Source of the DNA: Geosiphon pyriformis uo1
Lineage: Eukaryota > Fungi > Glomeromycota
NCBI GenBank assembly: GCA_016748015.1
Contig: JAAOMT010000570.1
Location: forward strand, 4,043 to 68,042
Direction: 5' to 3'
DNA length: 64,000 nt
The notes below the pieces were generated by a model. It was not told where the DNA came from. It ran no database searches and saw only the letters and a list, made by a program, of their open reading frames with translations. Positions 20,491-55,100 of the stretch are shown piece by piece (position 1 is the first letter of the stretch; every line of letters starts with the position of its first letter). A program made the position numbers and the translations under genes.

Positions 20491-21845
20491 CAGGGGGGTA
20501 TAAAAAGTATTGGACACTTAATATAATATATAAAAAAGGCTATATATAGTAATACCATTACCAATTTAAGCCATAATTTTTTTTATAATTACTTATAGTT
20601 ATAATCTACAAATCAACATAAATCACGTCCTTGTAAAACACAATAGTGAATCATACATGTATATATAAAATATCAAACATTCTTGTCATGAAAAAATTTA
20701 CCACATCAAATGTGTCTTGAAAAAGAACTTTCTGAATACCAAAAAGGAGGGATTATTTCAGCAATAAAGTTAGGACATAAAAACAGTGAGACTTTCACGA
20801 CTATTGGATGTTCACGTTTTTCTGTAATATGTGTATGGAAGTCATATGAGCTAAAAAAACTTCCTAAAAAATGAATGGGCTGACCACAAATTCTTGACAA
20901 ACGTGCATGTGAACAACTCAAATATTCAATAATGGAGAATAAAGAAACCCGCCGCCAAACTCTTTCTCAAATACGATTGAATTTTATTAAAGATACCAAC
21001 AAATCTATTTCTATACAAACTATTCGAAATGGATTAGCTCAAGAAGGACTTCGCTCATGCATTCTTCGTCTCAAGCCATTAATTTCCAAATCAAATAAAA
21101 AAAAACGTTTACAATGGGCTCGTACTTATGAAAATTGGACAGTAGAAGATTTTAAACGAGTTGTTTGGTCAGATGAATTTACATATACACAATTTAGGAC
21201 TACAGGATTTGGACATGTATGGCATAAACCTTCTGAAGAGTTTCATAAGGATTGTATTACAGCCACAGTTAGAAAAAGCTTTGGTTGCATGTTTTGGAGA
21301 TGTTTTTCATGGGTTGGTTTGAGTCCTTTAGTTCCTTTGGTTGGTCATATTACTGGAGTTATGTACCGCAAAACCTTGGCTAATTATGCAATTCCTACGG
21401 TAAAACTTCATGCAAAAAAAACTAAAAAAAAGTTTTTTTTTCAGGAAAACAATGCACTAATTCACACATCAAAAGTCGTGCATTCTTTTCTTACCTCTTC
21501 AAATATTGAATTACTTCCTTGGCCAGCACAAAGTCCTGATATTACTCCAATAGAAAATCTTTGGTCATATATTGAAGTTAAAATTCGTCAATGTAATTTA
21601 CAACCCTCAAATATTGTACAATTGGAACAGTGGGTTAAGGAAGAATAAGATACAATACCTGTAAATTACTATCGTAATTTGATCAAGTCTATGCCACATC
21701 GAGTTCAAGCTATTCTTGAAGCAAATGGGGGTCAAACAAAATACTAACATGTATTTTAATATAATAATAAAAAATTAACGATTTATAAGTTAATTTTTTT
21801 ATATAACATATTATAAAAGTGTCCAATACTTTTTATACCCCCCTG
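20491..21845 (+). mobile_element. Full-length Tc1/mariner DNA transposon (1355 bp) with TA target-site duplication
   Basis: Perfect 29-bp TIRs CAGGGGGGTATAAAAAGTATTGGACACTT at 20491-20519 and 21817-21845; TA at 20489-20490 and 21846-21847. Confidence 0.97.
20710..21747 (+). pseudogene. Tc1 DD34E-type transposase, inactivated by 3 in-frame stops and a catalytic D>N change
   Basis: Single frame from ATG 20710 to TAA 21747. Motifs VVWSDE, FQENNA (from QEDNA), WPAQSPDITPIENLW, SMPHRVQAILEANGGQTKY. Stops are consistent with CGA>TGA (x2) and TGG>TAA. Confidence 0.92.
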
Positions 21846-25891: not shown

Positions 25892-26114
25892 ATGACTTCT
25901 CAATCCCCACTCAAAATTCACAGTGATGACCCATGTTGCGAAAATGGGTACAGTTTTTTTTTTATAAAATCACAAGATACAACTTCCAAAATCTTTTCCA
26001 TTAACAAATTCCAATTCTTCATTTTCCAATCACTTTTAAAATTCTAGCTGCACTTGCAGCACCTCATGTTCATGTGAAGCCGCAGAGAACTGCACATGCT
26101 GTTCAAATAAATAA
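25892..26114 (+). CDS. Metallothionein MT-A (40 aa, 9 Cys); exons 25892-25947 and 26048-26114
   Basis: MTSQSPLKIHSDDPCCENG|CTCSTSCSCEAAENCTCCSNK*; phase-2 intron gtacag...ctag; caaaaATG context; TATAAA at ~25791. Not in the ORF track. Confidence 0.8.
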
Positions 26115-27242
26115 ACCATGCCAGGTTTCTTTTTTATACTAGGCAAATTAAGGTAAAGAATTTACCTTTGTTCCTCTCAATCTACCCCCTTTTTGGGATT
26201 GGAACCTAAGAACTGATTTGAAAATCTTTTTATTTTCTTATTTAACATGGGATTTCAAAATATTAGTCAATATTAGAATCAGACCGTTGTAAAATGTTGT
26301 ATAAATTAATACACGTAGCAAATCAATCGTTTTATATTTATGTAAAGTAGATTAAGAAAAAATACAGCGTTTTGCAATTCTTGTTTTATTAAAAATTGGT
26401 TTATCTTTTAACAAAAGTTGCGCTACAAGTTTAACTCTTACACTTTGACACAGAGTAAGTATTTAAAAGATAATAAACCTGAAAGCTAGTTATAATCAAT
26501 CAAAGTTTTAACCTCCCACAAACTTTCTTGTATCAATTATGGATCATGGTGACGACTTAAATTTAAAATTGTGATCATAATGTTGCGTTGTAATTTCTAT
26601 CTCTTAAGGTTCCATCACTCTCATCATCTTTTGCCTGCTTTTAGCCCAATTGGATTGGCCTTAATTTATTACAAAGTGAATCTTAGACCCTGGTCGTTAT
26701 AAAGAAGATTCCGAAGTTAAATTTCCAACTAATTATTATAAATAAAATGGTAAAAATTCAATACTAATTTATTTTGATTCGTATCTTGCTGTTTATTGAG
26801 TTTGCAAATTTTGAATTGCTTTATAACATTTTGAAAACGATAAACAAGGTTCACAGATCTTTTAATTACAAATTTTAAGAATTAATGGTTCTCTTAAAGA
26901 TTTCAGCGGAATGAACTTAAAAGGCATTTTTAACTATGGATTAAAAAAGAATTGGTGAATAAAATTAAAGTAATTATAATCAAACCGTGAATTTCCCCAT
27001 CTCAAATCTCAATCTTTTTTGTTTTCTGAAGATTAGAATTTAATCTGTTCTTTTCGTCTCGTAGAACGATTCCGGATGAACTAGATGAATGGATTATTGT
27101 TCATTATATTATATTTATGACTTTACTTTGAAATCACAGTTCTGTTCCCTTTGGTATAATGTCTGAATTTCCTGAAATAGAAATTCTAATTTGTAATAAA
27201 AGGTACAGCTTTATTTTCTTGAGTCACCAAAAGTTTAAATTT

Positions 27243-28523
27243 TTACTCCAGCTTTGGATACTTTGGAGATACTTCAACCAACTCATCTGAATCATCATCT
27301 GAAGATAACAGAACAAGGACTTCTCGATATCGTTTTCTTTTAGGGATACAGTGGATGAGAAGATTTTGATTATATTTGTTTTCAATGCTCTCAAGTTTAA
27401 TAATTGTACTTGCAGGCTCCACTTTGATATGCTTAATGTCATTAATAAAACTTGTGTCTTTCTCTTGCTTTGTTTGAGAAGCTTGTTGAAAACTCTTATG
27501 ATTCATATTTGGCTCTTTCTTAATGCTTAATTCTGTTTTTGGTTCCTTGTTAATAAATTCGACTTTCAGTTGCCTCTTGATGAGTGACTTGACTTGTGTC
27601 TTCAATTCCGAATTTTTAACTGTTTTATGACCTTTCTTGTTTAAAATGGATGAATGGATATCCAGATTCATCAAACTTTGCTCAATTAACCAGGATTGAG
27701 AGCGATAATGAATGTGAAGAACAGCTATCGGGTCTTTGTCACAATATTCGATATTAAAAATGTCCATATTTTCAGGTTCTTGAAGTGGCCTTTCGTCAAA
27801 ACTTGTTTTAATCTGGATTTCTCTATTCAAATTCTTTTCTTTAATCAAGATTTGCTCCAAGGGGATCCCAGACCTCTCAACAATCTTGGGTGTTATCATT
27901 TTCGCTCGATAAAAAGAAACACTCACTGTCCCTACATCGCCAATTTTCTGACTTGTATTGTGGGGTAAATTCTTTGCCCGAGAAGCAGCCAATTTAATCA
28001 TTGGTACAAATCGAAAGTAGCCAAACTTGTGAGGTGTTGAATTCCAAAATCCTTTGACTATGATAGGATTGGAATCCCTCAATAGGCCACTGGCATCATC
28101 ATTTCTACCATCCACATAAATTGTACAAATAAAAGGTACAAGATCGGTCGAATCGAGTGCCCAAACTTTTACTACAAAATTTTTCCCAGTTTCCAATATT
28201 GAAACATAGGTAGTTTTATTGCTAAGATAAAAGCGTTGAAATACCAAGATTTCAATTTCAGCTTTAATAAAGAATTTAGACCAAAAGATAATCAAACATT
28301 ACTTTTCATTTTTGATCCAAGTGGTAGAATAAATATAGGAAGGCCCAGTAGTCATCTGTAATGGGGAGGTAAAAAACAAAAGGGTTAATTAGTTTAAATC
28401 TAATTGTTGAGAGTTTTTCTAATCCACAACGAATACCTTTGCTCTATTACCAATGGGATCACTATACTCTGGGAGGACTTGATTATCAACCAATATTTCA
28501 AGACCAAAATCCTCTAATAACAT
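27243..28523 (-). CDS. Conserved fungal hypothetical protein (DUF7918-like); exons 28523-28437, 28355-28303, 28221-27243
   Basis: MLLEDFGLEILVDNQVLPEY...YVS...F.V....IYVDG...GFW...FRF...GTVSVSFYRA...PIAVLHIHYRS; GT-AG introns with consistent phases. Family name is from recall of the motif pattern. Confidence 0.75.
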
Positions 28524-30050
28524 TTTGCTATTTTTCCAAAAACACAGTTAGAGCAATTCCATACTTGAATGAGTAATCATAATAAAATTAAATCTGGAGC
28601 AAAAAATTATTCTATTTTATTTATTTCTGGCATTGATAAAAAGTGATTGATAACGGATTCTTATATTGTTCATTTGAATTTTATAATAAAAGCTTAGATA
28701 TAAATTTTCAGACACAATAAATATGATTTGAAATGATTCATCTTCAAATTTGAATCATGAAAACAATTAAGGAAAGTTCTAAAAATAATTTTCACTTTTT
28801 TTGTCTTAGTCACACTATGAAGAATTATTTTCGAAAAAAAAAGATTATTTTCAAGCAAAAAATTGTGTCTAGAGTTTCAAATAATTAAAGATTCTCTGTT
28901 GTATATTTAACATTAAAAGTAAAATACACATAACAGTGAGAATATTTTTTTGAATAATCAATTAAAATAAATAAATAAAAATTATAAATCTAGTTTAACG
29001 TGAATTATTTGTTGAAAGTAAATTCTATATTTGTATTTAATCAAATTAAGACATGATTAAGATTTTTGTTTTTTAAAATCAGAAAATTTTTTAATTATGT
29101 ATCATAATTAAATGAAGAATTTATTCTCTTTCAAGAATATATATTTTATTTGTTTGCTTTGTTTTTTTTTTCAAGTATTAAATTAATTTTGTTATAATTA
29201 ATTTTTTTTATTAATTATAATGTTAATATTATTAAAAAATGGCAATTGAAAATATTGCATCAATATTTTAAAATATTTTAAAAATATATATATCTAATAC
29301 AATATTAAAAATTCCAAGTAACATATTTTATTATTTAAAAAAATCTGTAATTTTTTTTATCAGAAAATTATTTTATAAACAAGAATTAATTATTATAAAA
29401 TATAATTTTTTAATAAAAATATTGTTTAATAAATAATTACAAAAAATTAAGCAACAGAAAAAAAACAATAAATATGTTTTAAAAATTAACTAAAATTTGA
29501 ATATTTAAACTTTTTATTGATAAATGAAAAATAATATATAATTTATTTATTGAAAAATATTAAAAAGTTATTATTATTATGTAACATAAAATGTATCATT
29601 TTTTAGCAAACTATTAATTTAAAATACAACATCTATTTTATAAAACAATAATTTAAAAAAACTCAAAACTAAATCTTCAATTGATTTTAGTATCAAGTAG
29701 CTAAAAACTTTATTTCCTAAAAAACTTAGCACTCTCTCGATAACTGGCTAGCACGTAAATTTTTAGTTTTAAAATTTATTACACAAAGGTTTTTATTTAC
29801 TTAAACCAGTAGCTTACAATAATTAATTTTATAAAAGACATTAAATGGTCATCGTATTTTATCAAATTAAACTTGAATATTCGAAAGTGGTGGCAGAGAA
29901 ATTCTCATTAAAAAAAAAAGAATAATATTAAGAATAATCTATGTTAGCTAAGTTAAAATTAATTGAAACTTTTTGCTAAATTCAACGTGATCGAGCTGTC
30001 CTGGTCAATTCCCCAATAATTTGTCGTCACCAATGGCTAGTGGTGAAATA

Positions 30051-30390
30051 TTAATTGCAACCGCAAGTTTCGTGTTCAGGACAACATGAGCTGATTAAAA
30101 AATTTAGCATAAAGTTACAATTATTGATTAGATTATTAGAACAGATCCCAAATTGAAACATTTAAAAACAAAAAACCTCCCTCCAAAAATAATACTCACT
30201 CATTATTTGTAAGAGTTTTTGAATTGCAAGAACACATTGTACCACAAGCACAACTTTCGCCACATTGGCAATTGCATGTTGTTGACGTGTTCTTAATAGC
30301 TTCAATTACAATCTCACATTTTGAAATACATGAACAAGCTAGACCACACAAACAATTGTCGCCACACTGGCATGAACATTTTGAAGACAT
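30051..30390 (-). CDS. Metallothionein MT-B (76 aa, 19 Cys); exons 30390-30200 and 30090-30051
   Basis: MSSKCSCQCGDNCLCGLACSCISKCEIVIEAIKNTSTTCNCQCGESCACGTMCSCNSKTLTNND|SCCPEHETCGCN*; phase-2 intron gtgagt...tcag. Confidence 0.92.
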
Positions 30391-31793
30391 TTTGAAGGAT
30401 TAGAGTAAGAAGTGTAAAATGTTTGGATAGGTAGGAAAAAAATTAAGGGTCAATGATTCAGAATCAAGATATTTAAGTGAATTAAATTGAATTTTTAATG
30501 TGGTTTTTCAATTTGAAAGTGAAAAAGTAGAGGGCTTTTTTATAGAAGATGTCAACCAAATTTTGCAAAAACTCATTCATCAATTATTACGAAAAATTCC
30601 CATGAATTAATTTGTCACCAACCTCAATTGAATACAATTGCCTTACATGTGGTAGTAGCGTGACATCAAGGCAAGTGCAACATGAAAAAAGGAGAATTGT
30701 TTTATCACTTGCTTATGTTGATCAAAAGAAACTCCCAATGAGTGAATTTTGCCATGCGTTGGCAATCTAATTCGATGATCGTTGCTTGCGCTATTTTTGC
30801 TGTAACTATCTTATTGAAAGTACAAAACAATAAAAGTTGGGATTTTATGAGGTGATTTTGCCTGTATCAAACATTAATTTATTAGATTTACCCAGGGTTT
30901 ATGTGAAAGTTCGCAGAAATGTCTCAGAAATTAATACGTGTAATATTGATCTTGATTCCAAATAATTCAAACAGCTGGGTCCCGATTATCAACACGAGAC
31001 AAAGCAATTGGAACAAAGGAAATACAAATTCATTTTTATATCAAAAATAATAACATATGAACAGACTTGAGAAAAATTAAAAGGTTTCATTATTTCAACA
31101 TCTATCAAGAAAACAAATGGAGATTGTTTATTCAATATAATGATATATCACTAAATAATTATTCAGTTAAATATGAAACTTTAACTTTATTTTTTTTTTA
31201 AAAAAACCCCTCTCCCCAATAATTTTATCCTGACTAAAAATTAAAACTGTCATATTTCAATTAGATCTTAATCATACTGAATGAGATGCTTCTTAATCTT
31301 CCACCAACGTATGATTCTCAATATGAACTTTTTAGGTATCATGGTTTACAATTAGTTAAAGAATTAACTAAGTTTATTGCTTACAAATTATTCTTTGACA
31401 TTAAAACTTGCTAGTAGAAGATTCTTCAACGTTCCTCCTGACAATTAATAAACAAACACTGAAAGGACCTTTGTCATCTCATTCCCTTTTACAAGCGATT
31501 GTCATACCATTATCTACATCTAAGGCAGTTATCCTACTATCAATTGAATTCATTGGTGGGAGGCTATTTTCTCCTCATTATTCGAATACCATATTTAATT
31601 ATTAAAATTACAAATGAAAAAGAAAAAAAATTAGTAATGCTAAGGACTAGTCATTTTCAATTCTTTATAAAAGCTCTGTTATTCGTCACTTAAAAGATGT
31701 TTTCATGAGTTAAATATTTTTCCTCAAAATTTCCCAATAAAACTATTATCAACACCATCACCTTTAACCTTTAAAAATAGTCCAATTCCAAAA

Positions 31794-32037
31794 ATGTCTT
31801 CTTCCAACTGTACCTGTTCATGCCAATGCAAAGAAACTACCTTTACTTGTGATTCCACCACAAATTGCTCAAATCTTTTAGAAAATACTACCGATAAAAC
31901 TTGTAAATTGCAATGTGGTAAAAATTGCGTTTGCGTAATCAAGTGCTCTTGCGTTTGTGATTCATCTACTGCTAATGATAATACCCTCGAAAAGAAAGAG
32001 TGAGTATTATATAAAAGATTTGGGATTTGGGATTGAA

Positions 32038-32076
<39 letters not shown>

Positions 32077-32178
32077 GAAAGGATCGTAATTTAATCTCTT
32101 GTAAATAATATTAATTTTCTCTAAATTCAATTGACTAGCCCATGTTGCCCTGAACATGAAACTTGTGGTTGCAAGTAA
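31794..32178 (+). CDS. Metallothionein MT-C (81 aa, 17 Cys); exons 31794-31999 and 32139-32178
   Basis: MSSSNCTCSCQCKETTFTCDSTTNCSNLLENTTDKTCKLQCGKNCVCVIKCSCVCDSSTANDNTLEKKD|PCCPEHETCGCK*; phase-2 intron gtgagt...ctag; 40-nt exon 2 homologous to that of MT-B. Confidence 0.92.
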
Positions 32179-32769
32179 TTTTTCATTGGTCAGTCCGAAT
32201 GGGAATAACTCTACGAAGCATCAATCAGGAAATTTGAGAGAGTAGTTTGTCTTGCATAAGGCTTGAGCAAAGGATTTCTTTATCTTGCTCATTTGGAATC
32301 TCAAATTAGAATTTACTATAAATATTTTATGCCTAGTTCACTCACTTCTTTTCTAGTGAATCGTTTTTAATTATTTTACTATGTTTTGAATAGTTATTAT
32401 TAGTAGTTTCAGTTTTCATTTAATAAACAACCTGAATCCTCATCTATGAGAATTTATTAATATGCTTTATTTGAGATTTTGTTTGATCTTTATGATCTTC
32501 AAAATCTAGTGCTTGATTAAAGAGGGACATTCAAGACACATAAGCAAAATTAAGTTTTAAAAACCTCATTGTAAAATACCGCGTTTTTAAAGAAAGGGGT
32601 TTTTAAAGAATGTTGGAACAATTAAAAAATATACCGTCTTTACATTATACTAATCAAGATGCCTTAATGTATCGCTCTATAATTTTAATTGTAAAAACAA
32701 CTTTTTTTTGGCTACTTAATAAAATAAATGAAAGAATTGAGGTAAGAATCTTAAGATTCACATAGAATT

Positions 32770-33830
32770 CCAAAATTAATAAAATAAATTTATTATATCT
32801 TTAATCTTTTTAAATAAAGAATATAAAAATTGAATTATTCAAACCAATGATCAATAATTAATAAATAAATAAAATAAAGTATATATAATTTTTAAATAAA
32901 ATTAAAATAATATATTTTTTATTTAAATAGTTTAAAAAAATATCAAATTAATAATAAATAGCTTAAAAAAAATATATTTTTCAATATATATTATTTGGCT
33001 TCTAAATTTCTTAAGTTAAGTTATAGATTTTGTACTTTATAAATTAATAATGATAAAAAATTTATAGTTTAATAAAATAAAAAATTAAATTTCATATTTA
33101 TGTAATAAATAATTGAATATTTTACTCTTTAATATTAAAATATTATTATTTAATCAACCTATTTTATTTTATTTAATTTTATTTTATTTTATATGTTTAT
33201 TTTTTTTTATTTTGTTATATTGTTAAATGTTTAATTAATTAATTTTAAAAATTATAATAAAATTAAATATTAAATATTTTATAGTTTAATTAAAAAAATT
33301 TAATTTAAAAAACAAATAATTATAATTATAATTAAATTTAATATATTATATTTAAAAATATATATATATATATATATTATTAATATTAATATTTTTAAAA
33401 AATTATAATTTTATAATTATTTTTATAAATTTTTAATAATCCAATTTTAATATTTTTTAATATAAATTATATATTTTATTTTATAGATTTAATTTTAATT
33501 TTGTATTTAAATTTAAATTATAAATATTATTTATTTATACATTAAAATATTTATATTATTATTAATTTAAAACTTATTATTATTAAAAATTAAAATTTTA
33601 GATTTTTTAATCTTTTGTTTTCTTATTTTTAAAAAATAAAAATTATGATAGTATTTTTATAAACAATTAATTATTGGGTTTTATATATTATTTTATGAAA
33701 ATTATATATAAATTAAAAAAAAATTCTTTTGTATTATTTAATTTCTTTTATATATTTAAATTTTTTTTAAAAATATTATATTGTATATTAAGCTTTTTAA
33801 AAACTATTTATTTATAATAAAATTATTATT
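32770..33830. other. Extremely AT-rich island, probably a fully eroded repeat (similar islands at ~28950-29700 and ~46980-48000)
   Basis: Abrupt loss of nearly all G/C relative to the flanks; no ORF or recognisable motif. Confidence 0.55.
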
Positions 33831-34903
33831 CATTTCAGACTCCAATATTGAAAAAAAAAATGTTATTATATTTTTAACAGGAAAAAGTTCAAAAACACAA
33901 AAGGCCATACTAATCAAGAATTATTGTTAATAAGCCTAATTTTTCATTAAAAAATAAATTACTATTTTTATTAAATTTATTTATTTATCACATGTCACAT
34001 GTTAATACTTTTTTAAGAATTTGTTGGTTGCATATCGCAACAATCAGACTATCTTGTACTCTTTTCATTCTCTTGCGTTCTGTTACCGACCTACATATTC
34101 TGATTCTGATAGTGACTATCATGTAGCCGCTTTTAAAATGTCAAGTTACAATTCTTTCCTGTGAAATTGAACATTTTTTTTGTAACCGAGGTTATTATGC
34201 TATATCATTTCTAACTATGATGAATGGAAAATCACAGGTTCAACCGAGAAGGCGTTTACACAAAGATGATCTCGGTGTCTTGTAGTGAAAAACATATTGA
34301 TAACTGTGCAAATAATGGAAAGCAGCTCGGCATAATGTATATCATGGAGCCTTAAGGTTAATGGAACCCTGGAAAGAAAGATCGAGTAAATTGAATCAAG
34401 TGGAGAGGAAAGAAGTAGTGGAACGCTTTTGTGCAAAAAAAAGAGTTAGATTTATCGAAGAGCACCAAAACAAAGGCAAAAGTTCTATGAATCACCGTCT
34501 TCAGAAGAGATTATTCGATTTATCCACATTCGCCTAGCTTTCATTGTATTTCTTTAGGAATTTTCACTGTAGTTGCTGATACCATTTTGAACCCGTTTAA
34601 TTTTGCACCATCAACATTTTTGGACCCTTCGGCTTTACTATATTTATGTTCCCTTAGCAAAAGTAACTTTTTTGAAAGCTACAATCGCAATGAATTTAGA
34701 GAAAATATTCTTAATTAAAGCTATAAGATGTCCTAAAATTCAATTTTAGACACGGTGATTCAATTCTAGTTCAATTTCAAAGAATAAAATATTCTTTATT
34801 GATAAGAGAAACAACTTTACTTGTTTATTATCACAGCAATGTTTCCAACTTTAGAGTAATAAAAAATTTGACTTCAATTCTACAAATTCCTACTACTTTT
34901 TGG

Positions 34904-35807
34904 TCACCTTGGGATAATCTCAAAAATTCTATTGCGTCGTTTATCTAAATGGTCTGGTGTCAACATCTTCCATTTATGATAATTCCGATGCAATTTAAAT
35001 AATGGCGAATCTTGATAATGTTCCTTAATAGCCAATAGAGTACGGGAGGGCAAGCATTCCTTAACTTTTTCCCAATTTTCACCATATTTTCTGACTGCTA
35101 CCAACAATTCTCGATTTTCTTCATCGGTCCATTTACCAAACTTCCCTCCTGGGATCAAGAAATTGTTGAAACGATTGTAGACTTCTGGTAGGGGTCGTCT
35201 AAGAATATCGGCGAATTCTTTCCATTTGCCTCGTTTTTCTGCCACAAGTTTTATGAGACGTTGATCCTCTTCTTTTGTCCATGGGGGAGTTTTTTCTCTG
35301 GATATCACATGGTAATAATAATGAGCTATTCCTGGCTTGGTCTTATCTTTAGCGAATGCACCTCTCTTGATGATTTCATTCCAATGACCGACACCATATT
35401 TTTCTACTCCTTGCCTGAGAGCTTGCTCCTCCACTTTCGTCCAGGGGCCGAAAATATCACGACCATCTTTAGGATATCTTCCCTCACTAAAGGGTGGTAG
35501 GGTCTCTGATTTCGCCTTTTCTTTTGAGGATTTCTTCTTTTCTAAAGAAATTGGCATGATGTAATTAGATCTCTGGATATTTCTAAAAATTTTTGGGGGT
35601 GATGATTTTTCCAAAAATACCTGTCTTGGGTGTAAATGACCATTTTCGCGTTTTAAAAGAAAGAAATCTAAAATTCTTTAAATTTTTGAAATTCAAAGTA
35701 ACTGGTCGAAAGTTATTCACATAGATACTAGTAGTGAATATTTCTTTCGTAGATCCTACTAGTAACTGGCTTTTGGTGGGTATCTTGAGAAACTTGGATA
35801 AAAACAT
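34904..35807 (-). CDS. Myb/SANT-repeat protein (3 repeats) with a basic N-terminal extension; exons 35807-35621 and 35541-34904
   Basis: WTKVEEQALRQGVEKYGVGHW, WTKEEDQRLIKLVAEKRGKW and WTDEENRELLVAVRKYGENW. A 79-nt intron (gtattt...ctaat...ctttag) joins the two track ORFs in phase 1. Confidence 0.85.
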
Positions 35808-37781
35808 TTCTACTCATAACACTAAAGATTTTGGGATAAAGCTTTTTGACCATGATGATATGAAGCAAACAAGATTGCGTACTAGTTTTGAAATATGAGA
35901 ATTACCCATCGATTTCCCCTCGCGATGAAAAAAAAAGAGATAATCACAATGTTATACAAATCAAAAGCCTAGTCTCCAAACCAACTTATGCATGTCTCAA
36001 CAAACAGAGCGACAAGCTGCCATCCAGAGCGTACCTGATTTGGCACGTGAGGGACTCGGGTGTTTGCATATTATTGATATATTTTGATTTTTTAAATTTG
36101 TAATATAATTTTTTTATATTGTATCATATTTTAATAAGGGATCACTTTTGTATTGTTAAATAATCATTAAATTGTTATAAAATAAATAAATAATTATTTT
36201 TTTTTACAAAATGATATTAAATGAGAAGAGCGGGGGTTTTTTCGATCTTTGAAATGTAAATAAGTTTGTCAAAGAGATTTTTCGTTTCGAATACCGAGCT
36301 CAAAATTTTTTTGACATTTGGATATAAATTTATAGAAAAAAAATGCAAATTATTCGTCAATTGAAAAAATCCATCAAATCATATCATTTAGTACATTTAT
36401 TACATTTATTACAGCTGAGATTACCATTTTTTAAGAGATTGCTATTAAAAAAAGAGTAATAAAGATTTTGTAATGTGATATTTTTAAAATCTCTTTCAAG
36501 TCAATAATTTAAATAGTTTAAATAGTTTTTCACATTGTCTAATAAAACAATAAAGGAAATTTTAGGGTTTTTTTTCTATAAATGGAACAATTCTGAGAAA
36601 CATTTATCACCATGATTTTTTTGAGCGATATTGCTTTTTCATTTAGTATTTTTTTCCCTGGCTTTTTTAATATAACACAAAAGATAATCACCGCCATTTA
36701 GGAATTAAAAAAAAAAGAATATTTTTTTAGATTTTCCCAAACATTGGGGTAGATCAGCATTAACCAATAACTTTTGTTGGGTATCATTTAGTGATTGATT
36801 GATTGATGGATGATAAAGTCAAAACGAGAATTTTATCCAAAAAACAAATTTCATCGTTCTAAATGAAAAAAGATTTTATAAAAGTAATAAAGTCATTATC
36901 GGCTGTATTTACTTCTTTATTTTTTTTTTCATTGGAAAAGAAATTTAAATAATAAACATTTTGATACGGCTATTCAAAAAATTTCAGTGAATTTACCTAG
37001 GAGTAAAAAAATACTCTACCCATCCAAATAAAAAAGAGTTATAGGCTTACTAAAGCAAGTTTGATACAAGGAAGGGTCTAGAAAGACTTGGGAACATTTT
37101 GCGCGATTTTTGCCATTTAATTGATGGATTTACAATATACTAATTAGTAAAATTCAATGAAAAATTTAATTTAACAAACATTGAAAGTTCAAGCAATGGG
37201 AATCATCCTTGTTAATTTGATTAAAAAGTTTTGCTTATCAATCATTGTTATTAAAAAGCTTTCAATCATTGATGGGCAAAAATTCCTCAAACAAGGTTTT
37301 TAACAAATATCGTAATGATAAGGGAAAATCCCGAAAATTTAAAAAAAATATATATATTTATTTATTTATCTAAATTGGGTACTCGCATTCTTACGGCGAA
37401 AATGACGCATTTGTTATGTCATATTTGGTAAGTATTTTATGGAATGATCTAAATAAAATTATTCCCGTGTAGAGTATTATGCTATTGGGTATTGTCGTGG
37501 GGATGATTGATCTCCATTTAACATTTAATCCCTCCCCGTGAAATCATTTAAACGTTATCATGGCGAAATTCGCGCAAATTCTCGATGCATACGAAAAAGG
37601 TTAATCGTATACTTGATAGCTTGTGAATTTTGTATAAATATGCAACTCTCCTGACACCTATTAAAAACTTCAATATTCCCCACAATATATAACACATTTT
37701 CATAATCAGAAAACGTTTTGCTAGAAATTCTAAATTCACACTTTCATAAAAAGTTTTAATCAAAAAACATAACTCAAAAAA

Positions 37782-38083
37782 ATGTCTTCAACTACTAAAA
37801 ATATGAACGAAACCTCTTGTCCCTGCACGGGTGCTGATACCTGTGAATGTGTTTCAAATTGCTCTTGTACGGCTAATTCAAATCAATCAGTTAGTCGAGG
37901 TGCTCAATCAAAGAATCATGGGTAATTAATTAAAAGTGTTCATTTTTTACGAGTTTTTCCTTTGTCAAACCATGATTTTAATCAGAACACATACTCCTCA
38001 AAATAAATAGCTGTACATGTGGTGAAAGCTGTACTTGTGCTGCCAAATCTGATGGTTCAGGATGTAATTGTGGATCAAATTAA
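37782..38083 (+). CDS. Metallothionein MT-D (70 aa, 12 Cys in 6+6 CxC layout); exons 37782-37921 and 38011-38083
   Basis: MSSTTKNMNETSCPCTGADTCECVSNCSCTANSNQSVSRGAQSKNHG|CTCGESCTCAAKSDGSGCNCGSN*; phase-2 intron gtaatt...aatag. Not in the ORF track. Confidence 0.92.
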
Positions 38084-39815
38084 TTTATACTCCAAATGGA
38101 ATTATTTGTGAAAGAGGGAGGATAGTTAATAATTAGGTTTAATGATAATATCATAACAGTAATTTTTATATATTAACCTTCATAATTCTATTGTCATACA
38201 ATACAGAATTACTTTTTTCGTAGTTTTTAATCAAAATACCAAAATATTTTTAGTTAGTTTTAATCATAATTTCGTTTTAATCATAATTTCGTTTAAATTG
38301 ATTCTTGTATCAAAGAATCATTTTTAAATTCATTTGGAATCTAACGAGCTTATGCTTGAATTAAATTTTTCTTTACAAATAAATTATATTCAACTTGTTT
38401 AAAATTTAAATATATTATAATGGAAAATAAAGTTAATGGAAAATCAAACAAATATTTTGATTATTGATTACAAATAATTTGTTAATTATACAAAAATAAT
38501 TATATTGCTCTAATCAAAAATTAATAATTTACATTATTTAGGTTATATATATGTACATGATTAATTAATAATTTTATATATAACTGTTTTAATTTATTTC
38601 TTTTGTTTAAATAATATCAATATTTATAATAAAAATTTCTTCATTATGACTCATAAAGAGTTTATTAAGTAAAAGTTTTTGCTATTTCACTTTTGAATTG
38701 GAAATTTTCCAAAATTAAAATCTTTATATCAACAAAATTTTTAGAAATCAATAGATCTCGAAGTTTTTAACGTTCTCTTGAATGTTAAATAGTTTTGTGA
38801 AAGATTGCGCATGTCTTTGTGGTACTTGTTTGAATTAAAATTTAATTTTTACTGCAGACACTTGTTTTTTTATATGAATTTTGCCGCTCATAGTATTTTT
38901 CTGTTGAACGAAAACTCATGAGGCGTCTTTTTGAAAGAATTTTCTTGTTTCAAGGCTTAAACAGGAGAGTTGGTAATTTTTTTAACTTAAAAAACTGGTA
39001 AGGCGTTTCAAAATTATGCATTTGTCATTAAACTATTTATTAGCTTTCATAAATAATGCAGCTTCTCATGTTTACAACGCCTGACGAAACTTAAAATGAA
39101 TGAAAATAGTGGTAAAATCCATTATTTTCTCCTCGTCCTACCTTATGATGGAAAAGTGTTAACCCATTCTCCGTTGTCCAAAAAGTGATTTCTAATAATT
39201 GATTCTTTAAATAAAATACTAGTGAAGGGCTATCTTAAGAATTCAATTTAATTTATCCAAACTAGCCGTTACCGATTTTTGAAAAAGACCATAAAATTCA
39301 AAGTCTCAAGGATCTTTGTGTATTCTCTTTTCTCAAATAATTGATACTATTATTCTTTTTCTTGGTTGCTCATCAAATCTTTTTTTTTTTTTTTTGAATT
39401 ACATCTGTAGGAATTAACAAAGTTATAGGCTACCAGTAAATTCCCAAAATCTCATATGAAAAAATCTTGTGATAAAACATCCGCCTACATTCTCGTACCA
39501 CTGCAAATTTAATTTTTAAGGATTGGCGCAATAATGATTTTCGTGTCAGAGTTCACCACATACCTAGAATAGGGGCGTAAATACCTCATTCTCGTTGGTG
39601 TCACTGTTTTACAAGTGGTACTACTACAGGGATTTTAATTAATCGACACTTTTGGAGAGAAATCTAGTAAAAAAGAAATTGAGGTAATGAATGAAAATTT
39701 TTGTATAAATTGACGAGTTTCTGTTGTAAAGGTCAAATCATTGAATAATCAATAATCAATAATATTATAATTCCTATTTCTTTTGTCGTAAAATCTATCC
39801 AATAATTACTTAAAA

Positions 39816-40140
39816 ATGTCTTCAACCTGTGGATGCGGTCAGTGTGGTGATAACTGCCAATGTGGATTTACCTGTCAATGTATCTCGAAAACTGAAACCG
39901 TGGAACAAGTCATCCCGGTCACTCAATCAGTAACTATTGTAGAAACTAATAATAATGATCAAGAAACTTCGACTAATGATCATGGGTGTGTATAATTTTG
40001 TGATTTTTTATTTGAACATTTTTTGATAAAATTTAAAAATTTACAAAGTTCTAATTGTTTTTATAATACTTATTAGATGTGTTTGCGGCTCCTCATGTGC
40101 ATGTGCTGCCTTCGGTGGATGTCAATGTGGTTCTAATTAA
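39816..40140 (+). CDS. Metallothionein MT-E (77 aa, 13 Cys); exons 39816-39985 and 40077-40140
   Basis: MSSTCGCGQCGDNCQCGFTCQCISKTETVEQVIPVTQSVTIVETNNNDQETSTNDHG|CVCGSSCACAAFGGCQCGSN*; phase-2 intron gtgtgt...ttag. Not in the ORF track. Confidence 0.92.
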
Positions 40141-40575
40141 TTAAAAACTTGTTTTCATCAAAGATGGCTACACGATTTATCCAAAGAATTGGAATTTCAG
40201 AAATTAGAATTTTCTTTCTAATTCAGTTTCTCATTCTTACCGTTTAATTGTAATTTTGTTATTAAATGTATTTTTATCAATTCTTCACCATTTGGAGGCT
40301 ACCTAATGGAATAAACTGTTGTCTAATTTCTCTGCAGATGAGAGCTTGTTTCAAAGACTAGGATTTTTGTTTGTTTTTGTAAATTTTTGTGGCCTGAAAT
40401 AAAATTAAAATTATAAAATTAAAAATCTTGACATTCGGACAATATATACATTATTAATGCTAAAAAAATTGTTTGTCTTGAGGATTATCCATTGATCTAT
40501 TGAAAATTATGTAATGATGAGTCACTGACTTAGTTACAGACGAAAAAATTTCCGTCAAAAAATTAATTGATTCAA

Positions 40576-43500
40576 ATGCCTTCAATATTGTTATGTTCCA
40601 GAGCTCCAATAAAAGTTTCAACAACTTCTAGAAGAGGCTCTTCCTGTAACTATCTTCAAACTCTCAATACTATTCATGGAATTTTTCGTCAAACTACAAA
40701 TTACTCCTCATATTCACGTGAGCCCAGAAGAAACGAGGGCTGGCGAGACTCTAAAACTTCACATAATCAAACTCGGTACCCGAACCAAATCACTACTAAT
40801 GAGAAGTACCAAAACTCTCATATAAATCCCAATACTTTTGCTTCAAGAGAGCAAAACGCACCTGAATATCTTTCAAATGCCCATGGCGCTAAGTATCAAG
40901 TTTCATCCGTAACTCAAGATAAGTCTCAAGAGACCTCTGGCCTCTCAAGAAACAAATTTTTTCATGATAAAATCGATTCTTCTCAAAAGAATTGGAAAGA
41001 TAATGAAAGAAACACATGGTACGAAGATAAAACCGCGAAGCAATCTTTTGATCATCCATCAAACTATCGGAATGAAAGAAATTTAAACCAATATCCACAA
41101 TCAACATCGCTTCCGTCTCAAAGCTTTTCTTCTAAACCGATAAATACCACCTATCCTAATACTGAAACTTCATTTCGACCGAGTCGGCAAAAAAATTCAG
41201 AGTCCACCTTTACCTACCCATTGGAGAAATCTAATTACTCGACCAAATTTACCCCATTTCAATCACGGTCATCTTCCTCCAGATTTCAAACTGAAGATAA
41301 AAAGGTCTCATTTCCGAGAAATCAATTAGAAAACTATGCATCAACGGCTTCCGATAAATTTGGAATTTCTAATGATCAACAATTTAACGGCTTGAGGCCC
41401 AGTTTAAAGCCTTCCATCTCATCTCAAAATGAAAAACTATATAAAAAAAAGTTTGAAGAAAGTACTAATGAAAAATCAAAAAATGTGAAAAAAAATATAA
41501 ATGAACAAAAGTCAAAATCGTTAATAAAAAATAATAACATCTCAAAATTTATCTCCTATGAAGATTATGTAGTAACTATTGATCAAAATCGAAAAGGAAA
41601 TCAAAAGGAGATTCAATCAAATGAATTAGGAAGTCTCGCATATAATTCAGTTCGAAATACAAAAAATGAAACTTTCCAGAAGCCCTTCCAATCAATTAAA
41701 AATATCCCTAATAAAAATATTAATCCACTAAGCATGAAAAATAGAGAGAAGAATAGGAATAAAAGGCAAAAACATGATAACAGCTTAGATGATAATGATG
41801 ATAGTAAAATGAAAAAAGAAAAGCAAAATCAATCATCACAGTCACAGTCATCCTCACCCTCACCCTCACACGTGTCTCCGATACCATCAACCAAATCCTG
41901 GGAAAATTCAGAGTCTATGAAATACTACAAAGAAAATGATCATGATTATAAAGCAGATGACTTAAATCCGGAAATAATTCCTAACGACAACAAACATGAA
42001 TATACTGAAAATCAACACTGGCACACAAAAGAAACCTTCCGGGTGGTTGATTACAATGGTAACCCGTCTCGAATTCCAAGGTCGGCTTTAACAACTCAAT
42101 ATATCAAAAACAGTGGAGCCGTTGAGAGAGCCATCAATGGAATACGTTTCCTTTACGATAAGGCAAGTATAAAGTAAATCCTTTCCCCAACTATGATCAT
42201 ACTCAATTCAAAATATTCTACACATAGCGAAACACATGATATCAACAAATTAATAGATATGAAGTTTATTGGTTCGTTTAGAATCCTTACGTATACAATC
42301 TCCAAGCTCTCTCTAACAAATTTAAACTTCACCCTTTGCTTGTTCGCCGTGTTTTGACCAATAAAACCACCCCCGAAGAAATTGTTAAAGTTTGGGCACG
42401 TATGAGGTATGGGTGAACAAAATAGGATATTATCAATATTAGTATTTTTGTTGTTGTTTTTTTTTACTTGCAAGACCAATAACCGGGATATATTTCTTAA
42501 AAGATGGATATTCCAAGGACCGTTTTTAAAAAAAAACCTCTGGAAAAAATATTTTGGTAATCTTCCACAATCTGCAGCCGAAAACTATGATCCCTATTGC
42601 CCAAACGATCCGGATCAAGTACAAAATATTCACAATAAATCGAGTTCAGATCCTAAATATCGGGGAAATAAAAAAGTCAGCACTTGGGAAAATGAACTCC
42701 AGAATTCAAAGGTATTATTGAGTGTAACCTTATATGAATTTAAAGATCTTGAAACACATATCGAATGAACACTCAATTCTTAAATGTTAAACAACAGCAA
42801 ATGTCCAAAAAATCTTGGCGACAATCCGAGAAAGAGGGATCATTATCAGAACCTATATGGCAATCTCAGAAAGGGAAATCGACGACACAATCTAGTAAAC
42901 AATTGCAGAAAGATCCATCATCCAAAGAATTTCAAAAACTTCACTCTGCATCGGGCGAAGAACAAAGAAAAGATCATTACCAGGATAGATTGCGCAAATA
43001 CAGAGAGCTTATGAAAAACCGGGGACATCTTGGTGATATCAAAATGAGCAAAAAAGGTATTTTGCGAAGATCTGTGTTAAAGCGTGATTTAGACATTAAA
43101 GAAGAGGAGCAGACAACAAAGCCGTCAATCACCTCGAAAAATTTACACGGCCTCAAGGAGCCTCCTCGCAGTTACATTGCTGATTGGCGAGATCGGCCTG
43201 CACTTCCAGAATGGTTAAAAAATAAATTTGCAGTAAAAGAAAATCTGCAGTTCCAGGGTTGGAATCCCAAAAAGAAAGTTCCGCGTGAAGACATGGAAAA
43301 GATTCGGTGGCTCCATCGTGAGGTAATTAATCTAACAAATAACCACTTTTATAGTACATATTATAACCTCATTAAAAATTTTGTTCTCTCGAGAAATTAT
43401 AGATACCCAAAGACTTTACAGTTCCAAAACTCGCAGAAACTTATCAAATCTCGGAGCAAGCTATAAAGCGAATTCTGAGATCCAATTTTCAACCTGATGC

Positions 43501-52193: not shown

Positions 52194-55100
52194 ATAAAAA
52201 TAGTGACTATTGGAACAATAAGAAAGGACTACTCTTCATATGGAAAAGCACTATTTCAATACTTTCGAAAAGATCTAGGAATACCAACAAAAACCACTTA
52301 CACAGAAAGTGATTTTTGTAACTATATCAATGCAAAAATTGACTGCTTGTTAGGCCGTACAACTGATACAGGAAGACTTGGAGAACAAATCCATCAAAGC
52401 TTACTAGGGCACTCAACAGCCACAACTACCCAAGCAATCGCTGAAACTCTGCATATAATCAATACAGACATTAAATATTACGTGGCACAACAATTCCCTC
52501 AAGTACAACAACCAGTGGAATCCAACCCTAAGAAATATGAAAACGAATCCAACAACCCTGTAACTGCCCAAGCCAAGTCCACAGTCAACAAGAAACCAAG
52601 GGTCCTCTCTCCAATGACTCCATCATACCATTAGACACTCCAAAGTAGAATTGTATTCAACCCACCTCTGGGAACCCAGTCAGAAATACCACAAACTCCT
52701 GGAAATCCACATCCTTGGAATCAACACAGTTGGACCAAATCACTAGGAGAATACAGATCACTGTTTGGAAATCTTATCCCAGCAGCCGGTTAAACAGAAG
52801 GAAACCTGTCAACTTGGGAACAGCCACTAGCACAAAACCTAGCAGAATCAACATCTCCCCTAACAGAAGAAACAGCTATCTTACAACCTATTGGTTTAAG
52901 CAACAAAGGAAAGCAACCAGCATTAGCACCCAGAGAACACTCGAATATGCAGACACCAATCTTTTTAAACATAACCAGTAACACCCCACCCATTAACCGG
53001 ATCATGGCTTACCGGGATATCGCTAAATTGGAAAAATTCTCTGGTGAAGAAGATAACACATATTCTTGGATCATGAATGCCAAAAAAGCAATTACCACTA
53101 ACAGTTGGAACAACGACCACACAATTCAGGTACTGCCGTTCTTTCTGACCAGAACTGCCAATTCGTGGTACCAGAGCCTGGCAGAGAAGCCTATCTCCTT
53201 TACCAAGTTTAAACTTGCATTTCTGCAATACTTCTGTGACCCCAATACATTAATCCGATTGCAGAATCAATTCAGCATAATTAAACAAAAAGATCATAAA
53301 GCAGTAACTACTTATCTCAGACAATTCAATCAAATCCTGCGTCAAATATTAGCTATCAAAAGGGACTACTATACCACGGTGCAAGTTTTTAATCAATTCA
53401 TTAAAGAATTGTGGAGTAGTATTCTAAGATCTATAAGACCCTGCCATCCGACCAGTTTACAAGATGCCATTGCTCTCACTCACAATTTTGAGTCTGCAGA
53501 ACAAGAAGCAAACCATACTCAAACTGTTAATTTAGCCATTAATGGAACCTCTGATATCAATGCAAAGATAACCCAATTGAGTGAGAAACTAACTCAGAAA
53601 ATTGAGGGATTCTTAGCCGGAACTACAGGAACTTACCAACCACCCCAACGGAGAGAAAATAACAACAACAGCAGATACCCACAGCAACAGAACTGTCAGC
53701 AACAGCAACAACCTTGGAGATCCAATCCTCACAACTGTTACTACTGCCAGAAACCTGGACACATCACCCGTAATTGCAAAAGGAAGATCATGGACCAAAA
53801 TCAAGGAAACCCATATCAGCAACCCAGATATCAGCAAAACATAGTATCCCAATATTCCATACTTCAGAATCAACCACCCCTATATGCACAACAAGTCCCG
53901 TACACTCAACCACCGCCCCAAAATTATTATCAACTACCACCAATGACACAAGCAATCCCTTACTATCAAACTTCCCCTTACAGCCCATTCAGACCTTAAG
54001 CTATAGACTATAATCAGGGATGGAGGAATTCCAACAACAATTAGATACAAACCAACAGTGGACCATCTCAACCAATCCCTCACAGTCTTGCCCAATCTTG
54101 ATTAACACCAACTGAATACCCAAATCAAGCTTCCTATCTTGGTCTTATGGAAGACCAGGGTTTTGATAAATCTACACCTGTGGAAAGGGGAAATATAGAA
54201 TGAATCTCCCAACCTTCCAAGCAAACAAAAAGCAATATCCTACCAGCCACTATTACTGAAGACACCACCCTAGCCACCATATTTCCTTTTGACATCGATA
54301 ATTTGAACACTCATAGCCTTTTTAGTGGAGCAGCCATCAATCAGAATAAACCAATAATGGCCCTATACACCGATGCCAGAGTCGGAAAAATAGATATTAA
54401 ATTAATCCTGGATAGTAAATCAGCCGGTAGCATAATCATGAAGCAGCTCATAGACCAACTAGGTCGCTGAGTAGACTGTGCTGCTACCGTCCAGATCATA
54501 ACAGTGGATGGAAACACAAAAACCCTGATAGGAGAAATTGACAACTTCCCTTTCAAGATTAATGAAATCCAAATTTCTACCAAAGTGCTCGTCATGGAAG
54601 CTACTCAATATCAAGCTTTAGTAAAAAACGACTGGTTGTCAAAAGCCAATACTACTCTCGACTAGAACACCCAAGAACTTCAACTCACATTCAATGGACA
54701 GCATGCCCGAGTTCCAGCTACGTGTGAACACTTTAAAACCCAATGTACCGAGGAACCCCTTATTGAATTTGAAGACACATTAATGTCACCAACCATTAAG
54801 ACCTATCAGGTTTCATGGGCAGATGATTATCGAACTGAACTACCCCCACCACCAATCTGAGAAGAAAAAGGAAAAGGCAGAGCCAAAAAAAAACCCCAAT
54901 CATCATCACTAGAATACATAATCTTGGACCAAAGAAACTTATTTTACCAACCCCCAAGACTAATATGTATCAATTATAGAAAAAAACTATCCACTATGAG
55001 TACATGTATTAGGGACAACAAAAAATGGCTTATCACCACCAAATATTATTGCAGATCTTGTTTACTGGAAAGATTTGGACGACCAAAACGACAAAGCAAG

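What the first reader, a model, noticed from the sequence alone, without database searches (positions are those of the whole stretch)
25892..40140. Cluster of five metallothionein genes in 14 kb, three invisible to ORF calling
Seen: MT-A to MT-E all have an A-rich ATG context, start M(S/T)S, and have two exons with a phase-2 intron just before the last Cys cluster. They carry 9-19 Cys in CxC/CC motifs. Knowledge: characterised AM-fungal MTs (e.g. GmarMT1, GintMT1) were described as individual two-domain genes, and fungal MT arrays such as yeast CUP1 are near-identical repeats. Inference: an old, diversified metal/redox-handling locus with one-, two- and three-domain isoforms, likely under-annotated. 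This is my best candidate for an undescribed system in the window.
Basis: partly seen in the sequence, partly recalled or inferred. Interest (0 to 1): 0.85.

Follow-up and report, generated by a model that had tools for sequence, protein, structure and literature searches.

The report
Five diverged metallothionein-like genes, one locus
A 14-kb stretch of an AT-rich, probably fungal genome holds five small two-exon genes for cysteine-rich, metallothionein-type proteins that look real, old and selectively maintained, but their expression and metal binding could not be tested, and a family of metal-buffering genes is not surprising.

Summary
Five two-exon models lie at the stated coordinates. All have GT..AG introns of 89-139 nt in phase 2, AAA before the ATG, an M(S/T)S start, and 9, 19, 17, 12 and 13 Cys (17-25%). 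Every Cys-dense open stretch in the 64-kb window falls inside these five models; shuffles give 0.28.

The paralogues are old. Synonymous sites are saturated (pS 0.54-0.95), while pN is 0.27-0.39 and Cys columns are kept. Introns and flanks no longer align. The proteins are built from two related Cys units plus a CCPEHETCGC tail found only in B and C.

In the 128-Mb assembly the family was detected only at this locus.

Calling them metallothioneins rests on composition and motifs. Pfam MT models score below cut-off.

No relative turned up in three word-index searches, one exhaustive HMMER search, or two metagenome scans. The papers I could search describe no such cluster.

Verdict: a real, probably functional, diversified MT-type gene family. 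It is a new member of a known kind, of moderate interest. The scan also noted B and C separately (s1-518372).

The parts
25892..25947 (+). MT-A exon 1 (18 codons plus 2 bases; only a CC pair, no full N-type Cys unit)
   Evidence: ATG with AAA context, donor GG|GTACAG, phase 2; sequence.
26048..26114 (+). MT-A exon 2 (C-type Cys unit, 7 Cys, stop TAA)
   Evidence: The intron splits a Gly codon right before the first Cys, as in D and E. It matches the D/E exon-2 DNA pattern with 1 mismatch.
30200..30390 (-). MT-B exon 1 (two N-type Cys units, 8 + 7 Cys, 65% identical to each other over 17 aa)
   Evidence: Weak Pfam Metallothio hit, E 0.25.
30051..30090 (-). MT-B exon 2 (tail CCPEHETCGC, 4 Cys, 1 His)
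   Evidence: The tail pattern occurs only twice in the 128-Mb genome (B and C); control 0.
31794..31999 (+). MT-C exon 1 (degenerate N-type unit plus second N-type unit, 13 Cys)
32139..32178 (+). MT-C exon 2 (tail CCPEHETCGC)
   Evidence: 88% DNA identity to the B tail exon against 0.40 for shuffles; three of the five differences are synonymous (read).
37782..37921 (+). MT-D exon 1 (N-type unit with 6 Cys, then a Cys-free linker ending in His-Gly)
38011..38083 (+). MT-D exon 2 (C-type unit, 6 Cys)
39816..39985 (+). MT-E exon 1 (N-type unit with 7 Cys, then a 34-aa Cys-free linker ending in His-Gly)
   Evidence: The N unit is 58-63% identical to the first unit of B. Weak Pfam Metallothio_5 hit, E 0.026.
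40077..40140 (+). MT-E exon 2 (C-type unit, 6 Cys)

Best explanation
The locus holds a family of five real, paralogous genes for small cytosolic cysteine-rich proteins of the metallothionein type. They arose by old local duplications and internal unit duplication or loss. All are built from one theme.
- N-type unit: CxCxCGxxCxCGxxCxC.
- C-type unit: CxCGxSCxCAA...CxC.
- Tail: in B and C the last exon instead encodes a short His-containing tail, CCPEHETCGC.

Architectures:
- A = C-type unit only, plus a CC pair.
- D and E = N unit, linker, C unit.
- B and C = N unit, N unit, tail.

Inferred mechanism, not shown: the thiolates of each unit wrap Cu(I) or Zn(II)/Cd(II) clusters, which would buffer metal excess and oxidative stress. 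On this reading the different unit numbers, and the single His next to the last cluster in B to E, give the isoforms different metal capacity or preference.

Shown: gene structure, non-random Cys density, paralogy, constraint on the Cys scaffold, and confinement to this locus.

Inferred: transcription, splicing, cytosolic location and metal binding.
For: - Gene structure and start context.
- Cys-dense open frames occur only in these models: 9 places against 0.28 in shuffles.
- CDS GC is 0.37-0.44 against intron GC 0.15-0.26. In B, C, D and E an in-frame stop follows within 0-3 codons of the donor, so the last Cys cluster is reachable only by splicing (sequences).
- Paralogue comparison: pS 0.54-0.95, pN 0.27-0.39; Cys columns kept 15/18 (B-C) and 12/12 (D-E).
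- The B-C tail exon is 88% identical while their introns and flanks sit at shuffle level.
- The intron lies at the same place and phase relative to the C-type unit in A, D and E.
- All nine units align to one consensus.
- Composition is MT-like: 17-25% Cys, 0-2 aromatic residues, one His each, no hydrophobic N-terminus.
- Weak MT-ward signals: Pfam Metallothio and Metallothio_5 below cut-off; ESM Atlas nearest named clusters are metallothioneins at 0.78-0.84, a lead only.
Against:
- No Pfam MT family reaches its cut-off.
- No PDB relative.
- No homologue in the large protein collections. Cross-species conservation, the strongest test of function, is therefore missing.
- No shared metal-, Yap1- or stress-responsive promoter motif above background.
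- A has lost the N-type unit and could be a relic.
- The dN/dS figures come from short, protein-guided alignments with saturated dS, so they are only semi-quantitative.
Confidence: 0.7

Rival explanations
1. The family is real, but one or more members are unexpressed or decaying copies, so the functional complement is smaller than five. A is the main suspect: it has lost the N-type unit and keeps only 9 Cys. C also has a degenerate first unit.
For: - Exon 1 of A has only a CC pair and aligns poorly with D and E.
- The first unit of C is the most divergent of the nine, at 27% identity.
- There is no expression evidence for any member.
Against: - All five keep an intact ORF, GT..AG sites, phase, the AAA-ATG context and the M(S/T)S start, even though synonymous divergence is saturated.
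- A relic of that age would be expected to carry stops or frameshifts.
- Exon 2 of A still matches exon 2 of E at 67% DNA identity against 0.28 for shuffles.
Confidence: 0.22
2. The genes are real, but the products are not metal-buffering metallothioneins. They would be another class of small Cys-rich peptide, for example disulfide-rich secreted or signalling peptides, or redox sensors.
For: - No curated MT family is matched above cut-off.
- MT identity rests on composition alone.
Against: - No signal-peptide-like hydrophobic N-terminus; the longest hydrophobic run in the first 25 residues is 1-3.
- Dense CxC spacing and the near absence of aromatic residues are typical of thiolate-cluster proteins rather than disulfide knots (established knowledge of MTs; general definition in PMC4965479).
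- The QCGDNCxCG motif recurs in other small Cys-rich intracellular-type ORFs.
- The nearest named Atlas clusters are metallothioneins.
Confidence: 0.06
3. The ORFs are chance products of an AT-rich, TGT-rich sequence or of microsatellite-like DNA, and are not genes.
For: - TGT is a fairly common codon in 27%-GC DNA.
- At a loose threshold (4 Cys in 12 codons) the window holds background hits, many of them microsatellite-like. Thirty places were found, 12 of them in the five models, against a shuffle mean of 6.
Against: - At the stricter threshold all 9 hits lie in the five models, against 0.28 expected.
- Shared start context, intron phase and unit consensus.
- The tail pattern occurs exactly twice in 128 Mb, with control 0.
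Confidence: 0.02

Closest known systems
Arbuscular-mycorrhizal fungal metallothioneins GintMT1 (Glomus intraradices), GmarMT1 (Gigaspora margarita) and GrosMT1 (Gigaspora rosea)
   Same: From my own knowledge and review text (PMC8908265, PMC4196481): small fungal MTs, cloned as single cDNAs, that respond to Cu and oxidative stress and rescue metal-sensitive yeast. I recall them as having two Cys-rich regions separated by a spacer. D and E have that two-unit layout.
   Different: No sequence of these proteins could be retrieved here, and the primary papers are not held, so orthology is untested. Word-index searches with exon 1 of D and of E found nothing. Either these proteins are absent from that collection or they share fewer than three 5-residue words with D and E. 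The one-unit (A) and three-part (B, C) architectures and the clustered arrangement are not described in any paper I could search.
Neurospora crassa / Agaricus bisporus Cu-metallothionein (fungal MT family 8)
   Same: From knowledge: a single unit of about 25 aa with three CxC pairs plus one further Cys, binding a Cu(I)-thiolate cluster. The units here likewise carry three or four CxC pairs in 17-20 aa.
   Different: The spacing differs: here CxCxCGxxCxCGxxCxC or CxC-x3-CxC-x5..8-CxC. The proteins here chain one to three units with long Cys-free linkers. No sequence-level match was obtained.
Saccharomyces cerevisiae CUP1 tandem array
   Same: Several MT genes at one locus in a fungus.
   Different: CUP1 repeats are near-identical, recent amplifications. 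Here the copies are 22-46% identical in exon 1, synonymous sites are saturated and flanks are unalignable. Two unrelated genes are interspersed, the orientation is mixed (B is on the minus strand), and the architectures differ.
Diversified MT gene clusters of animals (mammalian MT1-MT4 cluster, Drosophila MtnB-E)
   Same: From knowledge: old local duplications giving isoforms with different metal preference and regulation. This is the closest analogy for how the locus probably evolved and works.
   Different: These are unrelated sequence families. Pfam Metallothio scores only 11.9 bits against a cut-off of 23. The unit structure and intron position also differ.
Small Cys-rich ORFs with C-x-C-G-D-N-C-x-C-G repeats on metagenome contigs, many labelled human-gut metagenome and so probably bacterial
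   Same: They share the exact QCGDNCxCG motif with the first units of B and E, which suggests a recurrent metal-binding solution.
   Different: They sit on contigs of 30-70% GC, many labelled human-gut metagenome. They show no introns or linker-and-tail layout, and resemble the window genes only in the motif. I take this as convergence or low-complexity resemblance, not orthology.

Membership tests
Metallothionein (operational class: small, Cys-rich, metal-thiolate proteins) | Low molecular mass (under about 100 aa) | tested here: met
   40, 76, 81, 70 and 77 aa.
Metallothionein (operational class) | High Cys content arranged in CxC, CC or CxxC motifs | tested here: met
   17-25% Cys; 3-9 CxC per protein; CC in A, B and C.
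Metallothionein (operational class) | Few or no aromatic residues and few His | tested here: met
   0-2 F/Y/W and exactly one His per protein.
Metallothionein (operational class) | Binds Cu(I), Zn(II) or Cd(II) in thiolate clusters | not testable with these tools
   Needs ESI-MS or spectroscopy of recombinant protein, or yeast complementation.
Curated Pfam MT families (PF00131, PF02067, PF12809 and others) | Score at or above the family's gathering cut-off | tested here: not met
   Best scores on exon pieces: PF02067 15.1 bits (cut-off 25) for E; PF00131 11.9 bits (cut-off 23) for B. Six-frame scans of the whole genome found nothing over cut-off. The joined spliced proteins were not scanned because they have no reference.
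Glomeromycotan MTs (GintMT1 / GmarMT1 orthologues) | Significant sequence similarity to the cloned cDNAs | not testable with these tools
   No such sequence was returned by any search and the primary paper is not held.
CUP1-type amplified MT array | Head-to-tail, near-identical repeat units that include the flanks | tested here: not met
   Exon 1 identity is 22-46%; flanks and introns are at shuffle level; orientation is mixed and other genes are interspersed.
Expressed, spliced gene | Reads or cDNA crossing the predicted exon junctions | not testable with these tools
   No RNA run on record.

The most novel reading that the evidence does not exclude
B and C represent a previously unrecognised metallothionein architecture: two tandem N-type units plus a separately encoded His-containing CCPEHETCGC mini-cluster. 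The whole five-gene locus would then be a lineage-specific MT family with no detectable relative in current protein collections, its isoforms specialised for different metals or for redox buffering in a plant-symbiotic fungus.
Probability: 0.35. Interest if true: 0.45.

Novelty: new member of a known kind. Interest (0 to 1): 0.3.

Why it matters
If the organism is an arbuscular-mycorrhizal fungus or a relative, metal buffering in the hyphae bears on how these symbionts tolerate metals and protect plants on Cu-, Zn- or Cd-rich soils. So far that buffering has been discussed in terms of single MT genes.

A five-member locus with one-, two- and three-part isoforms would give concrete candidates for expression and metal-specificity studies. 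It also shows that very small two-exon genes are easily missed by annotation.

It does not open a new kind of biology. MT families and MT clusters are well known in fungi, animals and plants.

Tried and rejected
1. Homologue searches, exon by exon and by reference:
- E exon 1, B exon 1 and D exon 1 against the word-indexed 5.8-billion-protein collection: nothing.
- B exon 1 by exhaustive phmmer against 1.84 billion representatives: 0 hits at E <= 0.001.
- These blanks are weak. The queries are short and Cys-biased, and four ordinary ORFs of the window are not in the collection either, so this genome's annotation is probably not held there.
That step is left out.

2. Metagenome scans:
- The tail pattern gave 0 hits.
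- The QCGDNCxCG pattern gave 69 loci. All were small Cys-rich ORFs unlike these genes outside the motif, many on human-gut-labelled contigs, or incidental matches. None looked like an orthologue.

3. Reads:
- The look-up of sequencing runs found only three 'DNA?' runs of one sample, with no RNA.
- Those places lie in the spacer between the DUF7918 ORF and MT-B. They were not sent to any search tool afterwards, and I worked beside them.
- The 0.29 share of run X2 on 29900-32300 cannot be interpreted without laying the reads.

4. PDB sequence search: nothing meaningful.

5. Promoter motifs (MRE, Ace1/Cuf1, Mac1, Yap1, STRE, Zap1, HSE) and shared 7-9-mers in the 600 nt upstream: nothing above background.

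6. Organism identity:
- Not obtainable.
- An assembly-statistics paper search was useless.
- The Atlas look-alikes of the neighbouring DUF7918 ORF are eukaryotic and include a Mucoromycota cluster at 0.90, which is only a lead.

7. Other checks:
- The Lanfranco 2002 paper (PMC166539) is not held.
- A sixth gene or relic exons: none at the strict threshold. One weak stretch at 38794-38835 is within the background rate.
- Structure prediction was not run. Apo-MTs are disordered, so a model would not discriminate.
Full report
**What is there.** The window is AT-rich, about 27% GC overall. It lies on contig C654 of a 128-Mb, 792-contig assembly.

I read the five candidate sites and rebuilt the models from the window file:
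- A (+): 25892-25947 / 26048-26114, 40 aa, 9 Cys, intron 100 nt.
- B (-): 30390-30200 / 30090-30051, 76 aa, 19 Cys, intron 109 nt.
- C (+): 31794-31999 / 32139-32178, 81 aa, 17 Cys, intron 139 nt.
- D (+): 37782-37921 / 38011-38083, 70 aa, 12 Cys, intron 89 nt.
- E (+): 39816-39985 / 40077-40140, 77 aa, 13 Cys, intron 91 nt.

All five introns are GT..AG and phase 2, and all lie immediately before the last Cys cluster. Each ATG is the first possible start of its ORF and follows AAA. The window-wide frequency of AAA before ATG is 0.062, or about 9e-7 for all five. Each protein begins M(S/T)S.

That includes the remark that three genes escape a 60-aa ORF threshold: the unspliced ORFs are 51, 64, 69, 47 and 59 aa.

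**Is it more than chance?** Yes. Open-frame stretches with at least 6 Cys in 20 codons occur at nine places in the whole 64-kb window, on both strands. All nine lie inside the five models. Block shuffles give 0.28 such places on average.

A looser threshold brings in microsatellite-type noise but no convincing sixth gene.

Coding GC is 0.37-0.44 against 0.15-0.26 for the introns. In B, C, D and E an in-frame stop follows the donor within 0-3 codons, so the last Cys cluster can be reached only by splicing.

**Anatomy.** Nine Cys units align to one consensus. There are two unit types:
- N-type, CxCxCGxxCxCGxxCxC: both units of B, the N unit of E, the second unit of C, and degenerate versions in the first unit of C and in D.
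- C-type, CxCGxSCxCAA...CxC: exon 2 of A, D and E.

The two units of B are 65% identical over 17 residues, which points to an internal duplication. The first unit of B is 58-63% identical to the N unit of E.

B and C end in a separately encoded tail, CCPEHETCGC. Its degenerate DNA pattern occurs exactly twice in the 128-Mb genome, against 0 for the control.

The architectures are:
- A = C unit, plus a CC pair.
- D and E = N unit, Cys-free linker, C unit.
- B and C = N unit, N unit, tail.

In A, D and E the intron splits a Gly codon directly before the first Cys of the C unit. In B and C it splits an Asp codon one residue before the CC.

Each protein has one His. In B to E it sits at or next to the last cluster.

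The genes are not a pure array. A DUF7918 ORF (27243-28295, minus strand) and a three-Myb-repeat ORF (34904-35614, minus strand) lie between them. B and C are divergently oriented.

**Age and constraint.** Between paralogues the proportion of synonymous differences is 0.54-0.95, which is saturated. The non-synonymous proportion is 0.27-0.39. Cys columns are kept in 15 of 18 (B-C) and 12 of 12 (D-E) cases.

Introns and 300-nt flanks align no better than shuffled sequence, whereas the B-C tail exon is 88% identical. Three of its five differences are synonymous (read).

This is the signature of old duplicates kept under purifying selection on a Cys scaffold. It is neither a recent CUP1-like amplification nor decaying DNA. 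The alignments are short and protein-guided, so the ratios are only semi-quantitative.

**Distribution in the genome.** Several searches of the whole assembly hit only this locus, apart from microsatellites:
- Protein searches with each of exon 1 of B, C, D and E.
- The two exon-2 DNA patterns.
- A profile of the nine units.

Pfam MT models found nothing over cut-off anywhere in the genome. Within the limits of these six-frame searches, this locus is the only MT-like locus they detected in the assembly.

**What are they?** The case for metallothionein rests on the operational definition: small, 17-25% Cys in CxC/CC motifs, almost no aromatic residues, one His, and no signal-like N-terminus. 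PMC4965479 gives the general description of MTs as cytosolic Cys-rich Cu/Zn/Cd-binding buffers.

Curated families are not matched above cut-off:
- Metallothio_5: 15.1 bits against 25.
- Metallothio: 11.9 bits against 23.

The language-model look-alikes of B exon 1 include plant, dipteran and vertebrate MT clusters at 0.78-0.84, which is only a lead. PDB has no sequence relative.

The QCGDNCxCG motif shared by B and E recurs in many small Cys-rich ORFs on metagenome contigs, many of them labelled as human-gut metagenomes and so probably bacterial. I read this as convergent use of a good metal-binding motif and not as homology.

I therefore file the genes as metallothionein-type by composition and motif. 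I do not file them as members of any curated MT family.

**Relatives and prior description.**
- No homologue was found for exon 1 of E, B or D in the word-indexed collection.
- None was found for B exon 1 in the exhaustive HMMER search of 1.84 billion representatives.
- The tail pattern was not found in metagenome contigs.

These blanks are weak evidence of novelty. The queries are short and compositionally biased. Four ordinary ORFs of the window are also absent from the collection, so this genome's proteins are probably not held there.

Only exon references were used.

Paper searches found only reviews that repeat the single-gene studies GintMT1, GmarMT1 and GrosMT1, and no description of an MT cluster in these fungi. 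Subscription papers, including the primary ones, are not held.

I could not establish the organism. That remains an assumption.

**Expression.** Untested.
- The one run search returned three runs of a single sample, guessed to be DNA, and none recorded as RNA.
- Those places lie in the spacer between the DUF7918 ORF and MT-B. They were not sent to any search tool afterwards.
- No metal- or stress-responsive promoter element, and no shared upstream word, stands out above background.

**Mechanism, inferred.** Each unit would fold around a metal-thiolate cluster: Cu(I) as in fungal Cu-MTs, or Zn/Cd. If so, the proteins would buffer excess metal and oxidants in the cytosol. Unit number (one, two, or two plus tail) and the cluster-adjacent His would plausibly tune capacity and metal preference among isoforms.

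**Confidence.**

| Claim | Estimate |
|---|---|
| The family is real and MT-type | about 0.7 |
| One or more members, chiefly A, are silent relics | about 0.2 |
| A non-MT function | about 0.06 |
| Chance | effectively excluded |

**Verdict.**
- It is a new-looking member of a known kind. The B/C architecture is the most original element.
- Interest is moderate to low until transcripts, orthologues and metal binding are shown.
- The scan had also noted the B/C pair separately (s1-518372). My checks agree with that note.

Noticed in passing
window 27243-28295 (-): A 350-aa ORF with a DUF7918 domain (Pfam E 2e-9) sits between MT-A and MT-B. Its Atlas look-alikes are eukaryotic hypothetical proteins, including Basidiomycota and Mucoromycota clusters.
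   Followed up: partly
window 34904-35614 (-): A 236-aa ORF with three Myb DNA-binding repeats (Pfam E 6e-31) lies inside the cluster between MT-C and MT-D. Whether it regulates the neighbouring genes is unknown.
   Followed up: no
window 32040-32077: An (ATT)n microsatellite of about 13 units lies inside the MT-C intron. It could make the intron length polymorphic.
   Followed up: no
window 20932-21648 (+): Tc1/mariner-type transposase ORF (HTH_Tnp_Tc3_2 plus DDE_3) about 4 kb upstream of the cluster.
   Followed up: no
window 52947-56090 (+): A Ty3-type gag ORF (52947-53999) is followed by an ORF with a dUTPase domain (55467-56090). This is probably one LTR retroelement carrying a dUTPase.
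   Followed up: no
They lie in the spacer between the DUF7918 ORF and MT-B, outside every MT model.
   Followed up: no
L025-L093 (metagenome contigs), e.g. L025:1905-1930, L071:523-548, L041:1407-1432: The exact QCGDNCxCG motif occurs in small Cys-rich ORFs on many metagenome contigs, several labelled human-gut metagenome. One recurrent ORF of about 40 aa appears on about 20 contigs. On L041 and L054 (30-31% GC) the motif lies in a Cys-rich stretch followed by a coiled-coil-like region whose family I did not check.
   Followed up: partly
G000:C702:1853088-1853961: Three nearby matches to the loose CxC pattern in TGC/TGT-rich DNA on another contig. This is probably a trinucleotide repeat or a Cys/Ser-rich coding repeat, and it does not look MT-like at first sight.
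   Followed up: no
window 40567-42177 (+): A 536-aa open frame rich in Ser, Asn, Gln and Lys lies directly downstream of MT-E. It is low in complexity and I did not run it against Pfam.
   Followed up: no
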